Below are positions 6,665-11,900 of a stretch of DNA of 64,000 nt, in pieces (position 1 is the stretch's first letter; each line of letters opens with the position of its first letter). This DNA is from Anthoceros angustus (lineage: Eukaryota > Plantae > Anthocerotophyta): the NCBI GenBank assembly GCA_010909165.1, contig MU008153.1:682001-746000 (forward strand). Direction: 5' to 3'. The position numbers and the translations under genes are program-made. Below the pieces are notes generated by a model. It did not search any database, was not told where the DNA came from, and was given only the letters and a program-made list of their open reading frames with translations.

Positions 6665-7021
6665 GGCTAGCTCCCCTACCACAGGGCGACGTCACCAAAC
6701 GCCTGCTGTAGGCCAAGGATGCGCCATGCGGAATGCCAACAATGCGTTCCTGCGGCCCTCAGTCCGGACAGAGGAACCTAGACAGAGAAGCGAGCAGACC
6801 AAAAGGCAAATGAATGTCTTTATTGAATTGGTGGCTGGGAATAAACATACACTGATGATTGAGAAAGCCATAGTTTATTTGGGAATACTCCTGTGTGATG
6901 CTCCTATACGCTTGTGTGAAAGTGGTGTGTGTGTGCTGTGCCCAGGTATGGGGACGAAGAATACCGCAGCTGAACATCTACCACCAAAAATTCGTTGAGA
7001 CCACAGGCTCGTTAACAGTCC

Positions 7022-8536
7022 TCAAGACGGTTGTGAGTTATCAGCTTGCCCGTCAAGGACTGATGAAGAGGATAGCTGGGAAGGCTCCAGAAGGGGCACT
7101 GCAAAGGGGATGTGGGTGTTGAAGAGTGTGATCACACCACCGTGGAGGGCATTACTGTTCAGCTCGGGTATACCTTTGTAGTAACCTTGTCTTCTCATCG
7201 CACTGTGTACCTTCCGCCTAACATGAAATAGAGGACAGGAGAGGTTCTTAGTTGCCGAAGTGGCAAATCAGGCAACTACAAGATGCTGGGAATTAAACCA
7301 CAGTGACCCCTGCTTACCAGTAACGAGTCGTGGAAAGATGGTGCCAAAACTGAGGACCTCCATTGTGAGTGCGCGCAAGAGTCTCGGAATCTCCGTACTC
7401 AAGGGCCCACGGACACCAGCGTAACCAATAGTTGATCACGGTGCGTTCTGCATACTCCACCTCCTCGCAATCAGCGTAATTGGCCAGATGACTGGCTTGC
7501 CACCAAGCATCCGTGTGATAAGGAGTGCTGAGGACCAACAGATGTGCTGCTATGCTTAGGATCGGTGAAGGAGGACAACCGTGATCAATGCAAACGAAAG
7601 CCGTGCGACCTAACCAGATTGCCCCGTCTTGGATCAAGGAGATCTTCACCTTATCTGCAAAGGACCGATGCTGAGACCTCCGTCTCCAACAGGAGCAGGC
7701 ATGATGAAGCTTGTCTCCACATGTCTCAAAGCGTTGAGTAAGATCCTGTACCGCTCCCGATAGTCATCGATGTCACTTGTCTCTGTACGCAAAAGAAGAC
7801 GAAGACAAGACATCAAGCACTGCAAAAAAAACATCTTCCGAATTGCATAGCCACAGATCGGCAGCAGCAAGACGCAGATCCTTCACAAAACCAGACCTTT
7901 CGGAGGAGGAAAGACGTCGAAGAACTTGGCGTTGGCGACAGCAGCTAATCCCTTGATTTTGGCCTTGACAGCCTTGAAATTCCAGCCCGGCCAGCGCCTC
8001 GGCACTTCCACTGCCTCTTCCGGAATCAGCAGACGGTCGCCGGGGTAGAGCACGTCCGGAACGCTGCCGTTCACCTCCTGCAGCTCCTCCACCGTGAGGC
8101 CGAAGCGCTCCGAGATCTCCCATGCCGAGTCGCCGGGCTCCACAACCACAGCCTTCGTCCGCCTGCAACGCGTGGGAGCTGCGGGTGGATCCGCGCTGCT
8201 GGGAGGCCCTAGAGCGGCTGCGGGAAGTGCCACGGGCTTGGCCAGCGACAATGCGACGGATGCAGCTGCCAATCCTGGTCCGGAAGACGCAAGAGTTGAG
8301 GCGAGCGAAGCGGGTGCGGCACAAGAGGAAGGCAGGCATGCAGAGGAGGAGGATGGCCGGGGTGGCACCTTGAGCACTTCGCCGGTGAAGATGAGGTCTG
8401 AGTGGAGGTTGTTCTCCAGCTGGAGATGGCGCCAGGGTACGCCCAGACGCTCCGCCAACGTCCACAGCGTGTCTCCTTCCTCAACCACGACAACCCCGCT
8501 GCCGGCGAACCTGTCGCCAGGCGACGCCATCGCCAT
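7022..8536 (-). CDS. Two LysM domains fused to an invertebrate-type (destabilase-like) lysozyme domain; exons 8536-7897, 7782-7650, 7527-7318, 7217-7022
   Basis: LysM1 VVVEEGDTLWTLAERLGVPWRHLQLENNLHSDLIFTGEVLKVP and LysM2 VVEPGDSAWEISERFGLTVEELQEVNG..LYPGDRLLIP. Phase-compatible GT-AG splicing then gives LLNALRHVETS..VGDGGLSIGPLQIS.PYHTDAW..YADCEEVEYAERTVINYW..LARTHNGGP..STTRYWRKV. Confidence 0.85.
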
Positions 8537-8747
8537 AGCCGTCGCACCTAACCTTCCTCCTCCTCTTCCTCCCCGCCAGATTGCATTATTGGTGCTCCTA
8601 AATGCTTTCACGCCAAAGACAGACGAACCGAAATAGCCATCTGCTGCACTAATGGCTGTCGTTGTAGTAACAGTCTTGCTCGACTATGTGAAACTTCGGA
8701 TAAAAGCATAACTAGGTGGACCACACGCAAGTTTTGTAAACTATAAC

Positions 8748-8819
8748 TAGACCCAACGTGAATCGAACACGCAACTTTCTGAGTTGGAGTCAGACGCGCT
8801 ACCATTGCGCGACGGAAAA
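8748..8819 (-). pseudogene. Degenerate tRNA-Trp(CCA) relic
   Basis: Minus strand has GCGCAATGGTAGCGC (D arm), TCTGA-CTCCAAC-TCAGA (anticodon arm, CCA) and GCGTG-TTCGATT-CACGT (T arm), matching plant cytosolic tRNA-Trp. The acceptor stem is broken (TTTTCCG versus TGGGTCT). Confidence 0.8.
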
Positions 8820-8967: not shown

Positions 8968-11900
8968 CTAGCTTGCAGCTGTGGGGAGAGGTGGGAAATC
9001 CCGGGGCTCCATAGAAAGTCTTACCCGCTGGCTGAACCTTGCCAAAATCTGGTCTATTTGATATTCTGCATTGTCCACTATGGACTGAGATCGCTCACCC
9101 AGGAAAAGTGGAGCTGGTGTCCATATCTCGAAAGGATCTGGGGCGCGAATGGCAGTAGTATCCTTAGCTTTGGCAAGTTCACCCTGGCTTACTTCTCGGT
9201 TTGGTGGCACTGCAGCAGTCCTGGGCCTGTTGCTGACGGCATACTGCTCAACAATGTTGTCCAACCTAGGTCTCTTGTAGAAGTACCCACCTGAGAAGGA
9301 ACTCTCCGTAGCATAAAGTCGCGCCTGAGCTGCAATGGTGGGATCTCTGGGAAATACATAGACTATAGGGGGCGGCTCACTGCACAGTAATGATAGTCGA
9401 GAGTGGAAGATTCTTCTGAAGACTTCAGGCCAGATGGGCACCACCGACGCTCCCCCAGACCCCAACCACTTGACTTCACAGCTGGTTTGCAGGATCTCTT
9501 CTACCTCTTCCTTCACCGCCATGTTGGCTTGTGCTCTGCCATCGAGCTGGCACAGGTATCGCTGCAAAACATGAGATGTTGCAGTTTTCTGTGCACTGAT
9601 GTCTTGAACCACGTCTACTGTTGTGGTTGGTGCGTGATGCTTCCTGGAACCCCCTTCCTTGGAATCCATCACAGGAAATGGAGGCAACACACAATACTGG
9701 AGCACCTGCAGCATTGGGTTGAGAGTCGCTGGTAGATTCCATCCATGTCTCGGGAAATTTTTGTGTTCATAGAACACGGACTTCACTTCTGGTGGAGGCC
9801 AATGCAAGGCGGAAGAACCGGCAGTCTTTGATATATCCATTGCTGCCTGCCACAAAGCTCGATTGAAAGAAAGAATACAGTCTTGGGGCGTGACTGGTGA
9901 GACGGACCTCAGAGACTTTGACTCAACTGCCAAGTGCTCTAACACAAGGTCTCGAAGGTGTAAGGGGCAGATATTTGGCTGCTTTGGGGACCGTTCAACC
10001 AGCCACCCCACACCATCCTGCAAAGCCTTGTCATCCAAAAATGCATTTTCAGACTTCTCCTCTCCTGCCTTGCCAATAAAGACAACAGCGAAATAAGCAA
10101 CCTGACTGCTGGGGAAGTCCTGAATTTGTAGAATACTTGCTAAAGCAGATTCAGCAGTCTCCCCTCCCAGTTCCTGCTTCTCCCAAGACTGTTGTCTCCA
10201 TCGGCTGGACGCAATCACGAGCAGAGGCAATCGGGCCCCAGGTGTTATTGACTCGACCAGAGCCCGCAGCCGTGTCCGCTCCTCAATTATAGGGACTGTG
10301 TCCACCAACAGAAACAAGACTCCAGAGGCTCCATAAAACGACTCCTTAGAGTCAACGCTATCTACACCAAGTCCTACATCTCTGGCAATATAACTGAGGA
10401 CCACACCGTTCAGCTCTGCAACCTCCACTGTGACGGAGCTGGCTTGATCTTGAAGGTCCACACTATTAGAGCTCTGCAGCTGTGTCTGGCTCTTCAAAGA
10501 ATGTGCTGTGACCTTGGTCCATAACCACCTCCCCAAGCGCCGCAACTGCTTCCCGTATAGGCCATTTTGGTCTCCCATATCCCTCACCCTGGAGCAGACA
10601 ACCAGCTTCCAGCAGATGCATGTTGCTGCAGGGTTGTTCTTAACCAAGGTGGCAGAAGTGAGCAACAGAATATCCAAACCTGCCCACATCTGTTCAAGAT
10701 TTTCCTTGCGAGTCTTGTACACCTGATTGAAATTGAGTTCTCTCAAGTCCAGCTCGTCGAAATTGAATACATCTTCAAAACTCTGAAACACCAAACCAAC
10801 TGAAAAAGTAAGGCCACCAATACACCCAAATTTACATTTGTCTGGACTAGCACACATTACAAGCTGTAAACTCACATTCTGCCCTCGCAAAGGCGGTCCA
10901 GCTGACAGTGACAGGAGGGCTGCCTGTGCCCTTTCTCTGCGACGCCGTTTCAGTTCCAGCGATGCTTTTGTCCTCGACTTCCATCTCTTCATCCAGAGTC
11001 GTGTCAATCCAAGATATGCTTCTTTTCTCTCTGCGGCTATCCTCAATTTCTGCTCTTCCTCCTCCTGCCTCTTCTTCTCAGCAGCAAAGGCTTCTAGCCT
11101 CCTGCGCTCATCGTCCTCAGCCTTCCTCTGCCGTGCAATTTCCTCGGCTCTCCTTTGAGCAGCTACTTGTTCCCTATAGTGGGCAGCTTCACGTTCTCTT
11201 TGTCGTTCAGCTTCTTCTGCTCTTACTTCAGCCCATATACGTGCAGCTTCTAGAGCCCTTTCCTGCGCTTGCCTTTCCAATTCCCTCCGATAGATCTCTT
11301 CATCCCTTTCTCGACCAGCAACTCCAGCCATGTCAACCTGTATCTGTTGCTCCTGTGGTTCCAGATCCCTACGGACCCTCCTAATTCTGTCACTCCCCAC
11401 TTCAACATCAGAATCACCTTTTCTTTTCGACCGCTGTGGACTTCGCTCATGTTCCACAACCATCTGAATCTCAGGGTGGCCTGCACTGCCTACTTGCTGC
11501 TCCTCTTCATAGTCCGGCATATCTTCTTCAGGGGCTGGAGAACTCGGTGATGGAAGAGGCAAACCAGGATCATACTTCCTCTCAACAACAGAATGCTTCG
11601 AAGGCATAATGTTGGATTGGAATCTGCCATAATTTTGCACATCTGCAACCACTGTAGTAGACCGCTTCTCTACAACCAATTGAGAACGTCGAGTGGGAAA
11701 GGGGGTCTCAGGGATCACGTAGGGACCTTCTTTAACCAGATATTTCTTTTCATAATCCTTGACAGCAAAGCCAACTGACTCGCTATACCCAATCAAAGTG
11801 TCTGGATTGTCCTCCTGCAAGAGCAGGAGGAGCACAAAGACATAATATCAGGGCCATCAAAACCAGAACAATCGCATGCAAGAATGCACCAAACCATGTG

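What the first reader, a model, noticed from the sequence alone, without database searches (positions are those of the whole stretch)
7022..8536. Plant LysM-LysM + invertebrate-type (destabilase-like) lysozyme hidden across four exons
Seen in sequence: the ORF track splits this gene into unrelated pieces, but phase-compatible GT-AG splicing gives 2x LysM followed by LLNALRHV-E-TS-x7-G-D-GGLSIGPLQI...Y.D...YAERTV.NY..R...LART-HNGGP...T.RYWRKV. Established knowledge: E...D near the N-terminus, G.(F/L)QI, AR(I)HNGGP and T..YW.KV are hallmarks of i-type lysozymes/destabilase. The Glu (codon 7715-7717) and Asp are muramidase residues and the HNGGP His is linked to isopeptidase activity. LysM binds peptidoglycan or chitin. 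Inference: the low cysteine count looks more like bacterial i-type-like proteins than animal ones, suggesting an old horizontal acquisition that later gained introns. Known plant lysozyme activity comes from GH18/GH19 chitinases, and I know of no characterised plant LysM + i-type lysozyme. Possible roles are plastid peptidoglycan remodelling (seed-free plants keep plastid PG) or control of bacteria or cyanobionts.
Basis: partly seen in the sequence, partly recalled or inferred. Interest (0 to 1): 0.9.

Follow-up and report, generated by a model that had tools for sequence, protein, structure and literature searches.

The report
Plant LysM-plus-lysozyme gene, uncharacterised
This is a real, expressed four-exon plant gene that joins two sugar-binding LysM modules to a lysozyme of the "invertebrate/destabilase" type; seed-free plants and green algae share it, databases name it "lysozyme" automatically, and I found no study of it.

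Summary
A minus-strand gene (CDS 8536..7022, four exons, 392 aa) encodes two LysM domains and a C-terminal destabilase/i-type-lysozyme-like domain. RNA contigs confirm all three GT-AG introns exactly.

Single plant sequences fall below Pfam's Destabilase cut-off. A family profile, however, matches solved i-type lysozymes at E 4e-21. An AlphaFold model matches them best (Z about 13). The catalytic Glu and Asp, and the Ser and His of the proposed isopeptidase site, are conserved.

Orthologs with the same architecture and intron positions occur in mosses, liverworts, lycophytes, streptophyte algae and some prasinophytes. None was found in seed plants. The nearest non-plant relatives found are secreted proteins of Planctomycetota/Verrucomicrobiota (PVC) bacteria; a feature search also pointed to phage clusters. 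Animal enzymes are more distant.

The plant protein has no signal or transit peptide and few cysteines. UniProt auto-names the orthologs "lysozyme". I found no experimental paper, and this scan had not noted the family before.

It is most likely an active, LysM-guided, non-secreted muramidase. Its substrate is unknown; plastid peptidoglycan is the best guess, and the phyletic pattern is the main argument for it.

This is a new member of a known kind, and a good candidate for plastid-peptidoglycan research.

The parts
7897..8536 (-). Exon 1 (codons 1-213 plus 1 nt). It starts at ATG 8536-8534 and encodes two LysM domains joined by a Ser/Ala/Pro-rich linker.
   Evidence: Pfam LysM E 7.6e-24, 2 stretches. 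RNA contigs cover it. The first in-frame ATG follows an in-frame stop at 8686-8684 (read).
8363..8488 (-). LysM 1 (about residues 17-58). Only 16 residues precede it, which leaves no room for a signal or transit peptide.
   Evidence: residues 17-58 align to LysM of the orthologs. Alignment A4.
8021..8146 (-). LysM 2 (residues 131-172).
   Evidence: Best Pfam LysM stretch 131-172, profile positions 2-43 of 43.
7783..7896 (-). Intron 1 (114 nt, GT..AG, phase 1).
   Evidence: Joint 7782/7897 seen in all 4 runs. Model. Position conserved in the Marchantia and Physcomitrium genes.
7650..7782 (-). Exon 2: start of the lysozyme-like domain. It holds catalytic Glu236 (7717-7715), Asp247 (7684-7682) and Ser251 (7672-7670) in the GDGGLSIGPLQI motif.
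7528..7649 (-). Intron 2 (122 nt, GT..AG, phase 2). It splits the codon for the Ser of PLQI|S.
   Evidence: Joint 7527/7650 seen in all 4 runs. Conserved position.
7318..7527 (-). Exon 3: core of the lysozyme-like domain, including YAERTVINYWLRWCPWALE and LARTHNGGP (His312 at 7367-7365).
   Evidence: All 4 listed substitutions in this exon against related organisms are synonymous.
7218..7317 (-). Intron 3 (100 nt, GT..AG, phase 2). It splits the Trp codon of RYW|RKV.
   Evidence: Joint in all 4 runs. Conserved position.
7022..7217 (-). Exon 4: the last helix of the domain (RKVHSAMRR) and a tail that carries the bryophyte-conserved motif LFNTHIPFxxPLLE. Stop codon at 7024-7022.
   Evidence: The tail motif is conserved in alignments A1 and A4. 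The tail is modelled at low confidence.
8275..8368 (-). Alternative 94-nt GT..AG intron inside the LysM1-LysM2 linker. Removing it shifts the frame and gives LysM1 plus 21 residues, ending at a stop at 8211-8209.
   Evidence: Joint seen in runs X1, X2 and X12 but not X3. The frame consequence was read from the sequence.
6900..7021 (-). 3' UTR (at least this far).
   Evidence: X1 record 1 covers 6900-7216 without mismatches.

Best explanation
This is a nuclear, vertically inherited Viridiplantae gene for a non-secreted glycan hydrolase. Two N-terminal LysM modules bind GlcNAc-containing glycan (peptidoglycan or chitin-like). They present it to a C-terminal lysozyme domain of the destabilase/i-type family, which cleaves beta-1,4 MurNAc-GlcNAc bonds using Glu236 as acid/base and Asp247 as second carboxylate.

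Shown: the gene model and its expression; the LysM domains; homology and fold; conservation of the catalytic residues; purifying selection; the phyletic spread; and bacterial-type rather than animal-type affinity.

Inferred: that it is catalytically active, and that it stays outside the secretory pathway. The latter rests on the absent signal or transit peptide and on 2 Cys in the domain, against 14 in destabilase.

Inferred, and weakest (about 1 in 3): that its physiological substrate is the plant's own plastid peptidoglycan or fragments released from it. In that case it would complement the LysM-M23 endopeptidase DipM.
For: - Gene model: spliced ORF, with all three joints in RNA contigs.
- LysM: E 7.6e-24.
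- Destabilase Pfam: sub-threshold hits in single orthologs (19-20 bits). However, 66 of 72 family members match PF05497, best 9.4e-13, and most listed bacterial homologs carry PF05497.
- Profile against PDB: only i-type lysozymes pass E 0.001, at 4e-21 to 1.5e-17, with Glu, Asp, Ser and His aligned.
- AF2 model: pLDDT 86.9. The best matches are i-type lysozymes, Foldseek TM 0.70-0.73, Swiss-Prot invertebrate lysozymes and VIA Z 12.8-13.4, against 10.9 or less for lytic transglycosylases.
- Conservation: Glu, Asp, Ser and His are invariant in 17 streptophyte orthologs.
- Selection: 6 of 6 listed substitutions in the catalytic core are synonymous.
- Orthologs occur in mosses, liverworts, lycophytes, Zygnematophyceae, Mesostigma, Chlorokybus and Picocystis. 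No seed plant was found.
- Intron positions are shared with Marchantia and Physcomitrium.
- Plastid-PG context: PG surrounds the plastids of these same lineages (PMC9434261 abstract). A LysM-M23 hydrolase, DipM, acts in moss chloroplast division (PMC4015805).
Against: - No plant member reaches Pfam's gathering score, and the window's exon pieces alone gave no hit.
- No enzyme assay exists for any plant or PVC-bacterial member.
- A protein without a transit peptide cannot obviously reach peptidoglycan, which lies between the two plastid envelope membranes.
- From the title of Utsunomiya et al. 2021 (cited in PMC12681378; the paper is not held) and my own recollection, the moss glycan-cleaving role is already assigned to an MltB-type lytic transglycosylase.
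- The phyletic co-distribution with plastid PG was judged from named hits only, not from a systematic survey.
- A sister family in streptophytes carries the same domain on long, apparently cytosolic proteins. This hints at a cytosolic substrate unrelated to the plastid wall.
Confidence: 0.75

Rival explanations
1. It is an antibacterial or symbiont-control enzyme. The protein attacks the peptidoglycan of foreign bacteria (pathogens, endophytes, cyanobionts), either inside the cell or after unconventional release. Animal i-type lysozymes play this kind of role in immunity and symbiosis.
For: The catalytic machinery and LysM targeting are the same as for any peptidoglycan substrate. Animal relatives are antibacterial (PMC10126035). 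Atlas look-alike clusters by sequence features are phage proteins with Destabilase/SLT domains, which I take to be wall-degrading enzymes.
Against: There is no signal peptide. The protein is cysteine-poor, unlike secreted i-type lysozymes (PMC10126035). It appears as a conserved orthologous lineage with strong purifying selection, with no sign of the lineage-specific expansion typical of immune effectors. It is also present in unicellular algae.
Confidence: 0.2
2. It is a cytosolic hydrolase for non-peptidoglycan GlcNAc glycans, such as chitin oligomers or the chitobiose cores of free N-glycans. The LysM modules bind GlcNAc chains, and the domain works as a chitinase-like enzyme.
For: A title in the reference list of PMC10126035 mentions chitinase activity of Tapes japonica lysozyme. 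LysM binding to chitin oligomers is stated in the abstract of PMC2728734. The protein lacks targeting signals. Non-secreted LysM proteins are a recognised plant class (PMC2728734). A sister family looks cytosolic.
Against: The nearest relatives are periplasmic or secreted bacterial proteins of a peptidoglycan-lytic family; phage Destabilase/SLT clusters are also look-alikes by sequence features. No seed-plant ortholog was found, and that apparent loss is not explained, because seed plants keep N-glycans and meet chitin.
Confidence: 0.12
3. It is not a glycosidase in vivo. It could be an isopeptidase using the Ser251-His312-Glu236 triad proposed for destabilase, or a catalytically silent glycan-binding or regulatory protein.
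For: Counterparts of Ser51, His112 and Glu34 are all conserved. A destabilase isopeptidase triad has been proposed (PMC10126035).
Against: The isopeptidase mechanism is itself unsettled. The invariant Glu and Asp and the GPLQI sugar-binding motif are conserved from bacteria to plants, which fits a glycosidase.
Confidence: 0.08
4. It is an artefact: bacterial contamination, a pseudogene, or a chance ORF chain.
For: None beyond the bacterial affinity of the domain.
Against: Spliceosomal introns are confirmed by RNA. Intron positions are shared with the moss and liverwort genes. Substitutions in the core are synonymous. The tree follows plant phylogeny.
Confidence: 0.01

Closest known systems
Invertebrate (i-type) lysozymes / destabilase (Pfam PF05497). 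Examples: Hirudo medicinalis destabilase 8BBU/8BBW, Meretrix lusoria 3AB6, Tapes japonica 2DQA.
   Same: Same fold (Z 12.8-13.4, about 114 of 122 residues aligned). There is significant profile homology (E 4e-21). The catalytic Glu and Asp, the GP(L/Y/F)QI and HNGGP motifs, and the C-terminal YW.KV helix are conserved.
   Different: Identity is only 24-30%. The domain has 2 cysteines where destabilase has 14, all of them disulfide-bonded in destabilase. There is no signal peptide. It is fused to two LysM domains and carries a conserved C-terminal tail. Single sequences fall below Pfam's gathering score.
Uncharacterised Destabilase-domain proteins of Planctomycetota, Verrucomicrobiota and Lentisphaerota, plus phage look-alike clusters from the Atlas feature search.
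   Same: These bacterial proteins are the closest non-plant sequences found: 40-50% identity, 90-117 bits with the plant profile. They are cysteine-poor and share the VE(T/S), GDxG.SIGPxQI and ARxHNGGP motifs.
   Different: The bacterial proteins are short (130-200 aa), usually have an N-terminal signal peptide, and lack LysM. In the tree they form the opposite side of a 98%-supported branch from all green-lineage sequences.
DipM (LysM repeats plus M23/LytM endopeptidase), the plastid peptidoglycan hydrolase of Cyanophora and Physcomitrium (PMC4015805).
   Same: LysM-guided peptidoglycan hydrolase architecture in plants. The phyletic range is similar: moss, Selaginella and charophytes, with none in seed plants.
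   Different: The catalytic domain differs: a peptide-bond metallopeptidase rather than a glycosidase. DipM is of cyanobacterial descent and is thought to be imported into the intermembrane space, whereas this protein has no recognisable targeting signal.
Lytic transglycosylases (SLT/GH23: MltC, MltE, Slt70).
   Same: Related lysozyme-like fold (Z 10-11). Four of 72 family members also touch Pfam SLT.
   Different: Scores are lower than for i-type lysozymes. As I recall, lytic transglycosylases work with a single catalytic Glu. This family keeps a near-invariant Asp at the position of the lysozyme Asp.
Streptophyte 'type B' paralogs: the same domain at the N-terminus of 500-1350-aa proteins (Selaginella, ferns, Closterium, Spirogloea) or of short proteins (Mesostigma, Chlorokybus).
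   Same: Same catalytic domain and motifs. They sit on the green-lineage side of the tree.
   Different: They have no LysM. They carry long low-complexity tails, some with IQ-like motifs. They form a separate clade.

Membership tests
LysM domain proteins (PF01476) | Pfam LysM match above the gathering score | tested here: met
   83.8 bits against a cut-off of 20.9, two stretches.
i-type lysozyme / Destabilase (PF05497) | Pfam Destabilase match above the gathering score (26.2 bits) | tested here: not met
   The window's exon pieces gave no hit. Full-length orthologs score 19-20 bits, E about 1e-3. The spliced window protein itself could not be submitted. Bacterial homologs of the same family do pass.
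i-type lysozyme / Destabilase (PF05497) | Significant sequence homology to experimentally solved i-type lysozymes | tested here: met
   Plant-only profile E 1.7e-8. Family profile E 4e-21 over the whole domain, and the only PDB hits at E 0.001 or better are i-type lysozymes.
i-type lysozyme / Destabilase (PF05497) | Lysozyme-like fold closest to i-type structures | tested here: met
   AF2 model of the Sphagnum ortholog, which is 79% identical to the window domain. Foldseek top six hits are i-type lysozymes. VIA Z 12.8-13.4.
i-type lysozyme / Destabilase (PF05497) | Catalytic Glu and Asp (destabilase Glu34/Asp46) | tested here: met
   Both align. They correspond to window Glu236 and Asp247 and are invariant in the orthologs.
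i-type lysozyme / Destabilase (PF05497) | Disulfide-rich secreted protein (14 Cys in destabilase; signal peptide) | tested here: not met
   Two Cys in the domain and five in the whole protein. LysM1 starts at residue 17. The destabilase cysteine count comes from PMC10126035.
i-type lysozyme / Destabilase (PF05497) | Muramidase (and, in some members, isopeptidase) activity | not testable with these tools
   Needs recombinant protein and lysis, zymogram and isopeptide assays.
Plastid peptidoglycan hydrolases (DipM-type) | M23/LytM domain and localisation in the plastid envelope | tested here: not met
   No M23 match. No N-terminal extension before LysM1, and an in-frame stop lies upstream at 8686-8684. 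Localisation itself is not testable here.
Lytic transglycosylase (SLT, PF01464) | SLT profile match and a single catalytic Glu without the lysozyme Asp | tested here: not met
   No plant member hit SLT at E 10 or better. Only 4 of 72 family members match SLT. The Asp is nearly invariant.

The most novel reading that the evidence does not exclude
The LysM-destabilase protein is the glycan-strand hydrolase of the plastid peptidoglycan wall, or of muropeptides released from it. The ancestor of green plants would have acquired it from a PVC-type bacterium. It would reach its substrate by a non-canonical route, work alongside DipM in plastid division, and have been lost together with the wall in seed plants.
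Probability: 0.22. Interest if true: 0.75.

Novelty: new member of a known kind. Interest (0 to 1): 0.55.

Why it matters
An i-type (destabilase-family) lysozyme conserved from prasinophytes to lycophytes is not discussed in the literature I could search. It exists only as an automatic UniProt name.

Its lineage distribution overlaps with lineages reported to retain plastid peptidoglycan. That makes it a concrete, easily testable candidate for the poorly known degradative side of that wall, through knock-out, localisation and zymogram experiments in Marchantia, Physcomitrium or a hornwort.

The family also offers a cysteine-poor, probably cytosol-compatible lysozyme scaffold. It is also a case of a plant enzyme that is closer to PVC-bacterial proteins than to animal ones.

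Tried and rejected
- Pfam on the separate exon translations of the lysozyme part gave nothing, because the domain is split three ways. The spliced protein could not be passed by reference and I did not type it in, so orthologs stood in for it.
- The search for related loci with the 72-sequence alignment failed for lack of a conserved stretch. It was redone with 11 sequences.
- The full-length AF2 model built on a 17-sequence alignment was poor (pLDDT 52.9; only the LysM domains were confident). It says nothing about domain packing or the C-terminal tail.
- Animal i-type lysozymes could not be brought into the tree. None was among the listed hits, and I did not type sequences in. The plant/bacteria/animal branching order is therefore untested, and the tree is unrooted and short (119 columns).
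- Two fern type-B rows were badly extracted in the tree (24% filled) and should be ignored.
- Literature searches for destabilase or i-type lysozyme together with plants, for Mp6g09090, and for bacterial destabilase found no relevant study. Utsunomiya et al. 2021 is not held.
- ARAGORN found no tRNA near the gene. The neighbouring 955-aa ORF has no Pfam match.
- Contamination and pseudogene readings are rejected.

Full report
**Observation**

The finding lies on the minus strand. Joining 8536-7897, 7782-7650, 7527-7318 and 7217-7022 gives an uninterrupted 1179-nt CDS of 392 aa. Its three GT..AG introns are 114, 122 and 100 nt long, in phases 1, 2 and 2. The Glu codon is at 7715-7717.

Public RNA runs settle the splicing. 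All four runs I laid on 6900-8700 show exactly these three joints, with CT..AC ends on the plus strand. In run X1 a single 1076-nt contig with no mismatch runs from the 3' UTR through all three joints into exon 1. The LysM exon is therefore joined to the lysozyme exons in real transcripts. Two related organisms (coded B and C, about 95% identical) use the same joints.

**Start codon and targeting**

ATG 8536 is the first in-frame ATG after an in-frame stop at 8686-8684 (read). A relative's contig runs straight through the leader without another joint. Only 16 residues precede the first LysM domain, so there is no room for a signal or transit peptide. The orthologs show the same short N-terminus (alignment A4).

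**Domains**

- Exon 1 scores LysM at E 7.6e-24 with two stretches.
- The lysozyme part is split over three exons, and the pieces alone hit nothing.
- I could not submit a spliced protein by reference, so I found orthologs with the exon-1 ORF. They are Physcomitrium A9STB5, Sphagnum, Marchantia Mp6g09090, Riccia, Diphasiastrum and Selaginella.
- Their annotated proteins read straight across my exon junctions, which confirms the model independently. The window's C-terminal domain is 79% identical to Sphagnum, 77% to Marchantia, 76% to Physcomitrium and 64% to Selaginella.
- That near-equal distance to mosses and liverworts would fit a third bryophyte lineage such as a hornwort. The organism is coded, so I cannot name it.

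**Is the C-terminus an i-type lysozyme?**

- Single orthologs reach only 19-20 bits on Pfam Destabilase, below the cut-off of 26.2. By Pfam's own rule they are not members.
- A profile of seven plant domains hits only i-type lysozymes among solved structures, led by destabilase 8BBU at E 1.7e-8, then Meretrix and Tapes.
- An exhaustive profile search found 1799 relatives, 732 of them at E 1e-10 or better.
- A 72-sequence family profile raises the PDB hits to E 4e-21 through 1.5e-17 over the full domain.
- In that alignment the family's VE(T/S) Glu pairs with destabilase Glu34. The GD Asp pairs with Asp46, the Ser of LSIGP with Ser51, and the His of HNGGP with His112. Residue roles are taken from PMC10126035.
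- 66 of the 72 members match PF05497, best 9.4e-13.
- An AlphaFold model of the Sphagnum domain (pLDDT 86.9) has i-type lysozymes as its six best PDB matches (TM by target 0.69-0.73). Invertebrate lysozymes are also its best Swiss-Prot matches.
- VIA-align gives Z 12.8-13.4 over about 114 of 122 residues. Lytic transglycosylases follow at Z 10.9 or less.

The homology and fold claims hold. The family is a divergent branch of the destabilase family.

**Relatives and history**

The same LysM-plus-domain architecture ("type A") occurs in these groups:
- mosses, liverworts and lycophytes;
- Zygnematophyceae (Closterium, Mesotaenium);
- Mesostigma and Chlorokybus;
- the prasinophyte Picocystis;
- marine metagenomic proteins of the same architecture, which are probably picoeukaryotic.

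A second family ("type B") carries the domain without LysM at the head of long proteins. It occurs in ferns, Selaginella, Closterium and Spirogloea, and in short form in Mesostigma and Chlorokybus. No seed-plant protein appeared in any list.

Outside plants, the nearest sequences found are short, signal-peptide-bearing proteins. They come overwhelmingly from Planctomycetota, Verrucomicrobiota, Lentisphaerota and Kiritimatiellota (43 loci), and most of those listed carry PF05497. A protein-feature search also points to phage clusters with Destabilase/SLT domains.

The plant profile scores 90-117 bits on the bacterial proteins and 27-37 bits on animal enzymes.

A maximum-likelihood tree of 95 rows and 119 columns separates 34 green-lineage sequences from 61 bacterial ones by one branch with 98% SH-aLRT support. 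The window falls inside a land-plant clade of type A, with streptophyte algae outside it. This looks like vertical descent within Viridiplantae.

The tree is unrooted and lacks animals. A transfer between a PVC-like bacterium and the green ancestor is plausible, but it is not demonstrated and has no direction.

The three intron positions coincide, within tblastn resolution, with those of the Marchantia and Physcomitrium genes. The introns therefore predate the split of the bryophyte lineages.

**Constraint**

Glu, Asp, Ser and His are invariant in 17 streptophyte orthologs. Of the listed substitutions between the window and organisms B and C, all six in the catalytic core are synonymous. The linker and the tail carry many replacements. 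Only 40 of 79 differences were listed, so this is indicative only.

**Mechanism**

What is shown supports a LysM-guided retaining glycosidase acting on GlcNAc/MurNAc glycan. The protein differs from animal i-type lysozymes in ways that point to a non-secretory life:
- it has no signal peptide;
- it has two cysteines in the domain, against 14 disulfide-bonded cysteines in destabilase.

The physiological substrate is not shown. I favour the plant's own plastid peptidoglycan or its fragments, at about one chance in three, for three reasons:
- the lineages that keep the gene overlap with those reported to keep a plastid wall (PMC9434261 abstract);
- the LysM-M23 hydrolase DipM has a similar distribution and acts in moss chloroplast division (PMC4015805);
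- earlier notes of this scan report a LysM-M23 gene and another LysM gene in this same genome (unchecked leads).

Three points count against it:
- the wall lies between the envelope membranes, and this protein has no visible import signal;
- a lytic transglycosylase is already implicated in moss (reference title seen; the paper is not held);
- the type-B proteins look cytosolic.

The rivals are defence against bacteria, hydrolysis of chitin or N-glycan-core glycans in the cytosol, and an isopeptidase or non-catalytic role.

**Novelty**

UniRef names the Physcomitrium, Sphagnum, Marchantia, Riccia, Selaginella and Picocystis proteins "lysozyme". I take this to be automatic annotation. NCBI calls them hypothetical or uncharacterised.

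Reviews of plant LysM genes and lectins do not mention a lysozyme partner. One notes only that GH-plus-LysM combinations are restricted to bryophytes.

Searches for destabilase or i-type lysozyme with plants, and for Mp6g09090, found no study. The destabilase structure paper explicitly discarded the bacterial and viral branch of PF05497.

The gene is therefore a new member of a known enzyme kind in an uncharacterised, database-visible plant family. It is not a new kind of system.

**Other observations**

- A 94-nt GT..AG intron (8368..8275) inside the LysM1-LysM2 linker is removed in a sizeable share of contigs in three of four runs. Its removal shifts the frame, giving LysM1 plus 21 residues and a stop at 8211-8209 (sequence).
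- The leader holds two short upstream ORFs.
- A truncated tRNA-like element lies at 8753-8815 on the minus strand.
- Run X1 also holds diverged contigs over the LysM/linker region.

Noticed in passing
window 8275-8368 (-): An alternative 94-nt GT..AG intron lies in the LysM1-LysM2 linker. It is removed in contigs of runs X1, X2 and X12 but not X3. Removal shifts the frame and predicts a 77-aa product with LysM1 only (stop at 8211-8209), which may be an NMD target.
   Followed up: partly
window 8608-8640 (-) and 8548-8586 (-): Two short upstream ORFs (10 and 12 codons) sit in the 5' leader before ATG 8536. The distal one lies at the edge of the RNA coverage.
   Followed up: no
window 8753-8815 (-): A truncated tRNA-like element: Rfam tRNA 44.8 bits, model positions 5-66 of 71. 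ARAGORN calls no gene. By eye it resembles a nuclear tRNA-Trp. It could be a pseudogene or a SINE remnant about 220 nt upstream of the gene.
   Followed up: partly
window 8968-11835 (-): The neighbouring uninterrupted 955-aa ORF has a Glu/Arg-rich middle. It has no Pfam match at E 0.01 or better.
   Followed up: partly
window 7984-8615, run X1 records 2 and 5: The same RNA sample holds diverged contigs (about 91-94% identical; depths 111 and 46 against 26 for the exact copy) over the LysM/linker region. They have loose ends and a 'goes back 153' joint (8495 to 8343). This could be a second copy, an allele or a related organism in the sample.
   Followed up: no
proteins P0053, P0055-P0058, P0064, P0086, P0105 (Closterium, Selaginella, Spirogloea, Pteridium, Ceratopteris, Adiantum): A sister 'type B' family carries the same destabilase-like domain, without LysM, at the N-terminus of 500-1350-aa proteins. 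These have low-complexity tails and IQ-like motifs, and some start with MG(C), which may be acylation sites. UniRef also names them 'lysozyme'.
   Followed up: partly
window exon 4, about 7060-7110 (-); alignment A4 columns about 425-445: A C-terminal motif, LF(N/S)(T/A)HIPFxxP(I/L)(L/F)E, is conserved in bryophytes. A different conserved tail motif (VPLEARTLFA.D) occurs in chlorophyte-like homologs. Its function is unknown, and it is modelled at low confidence.
   Followed up: no
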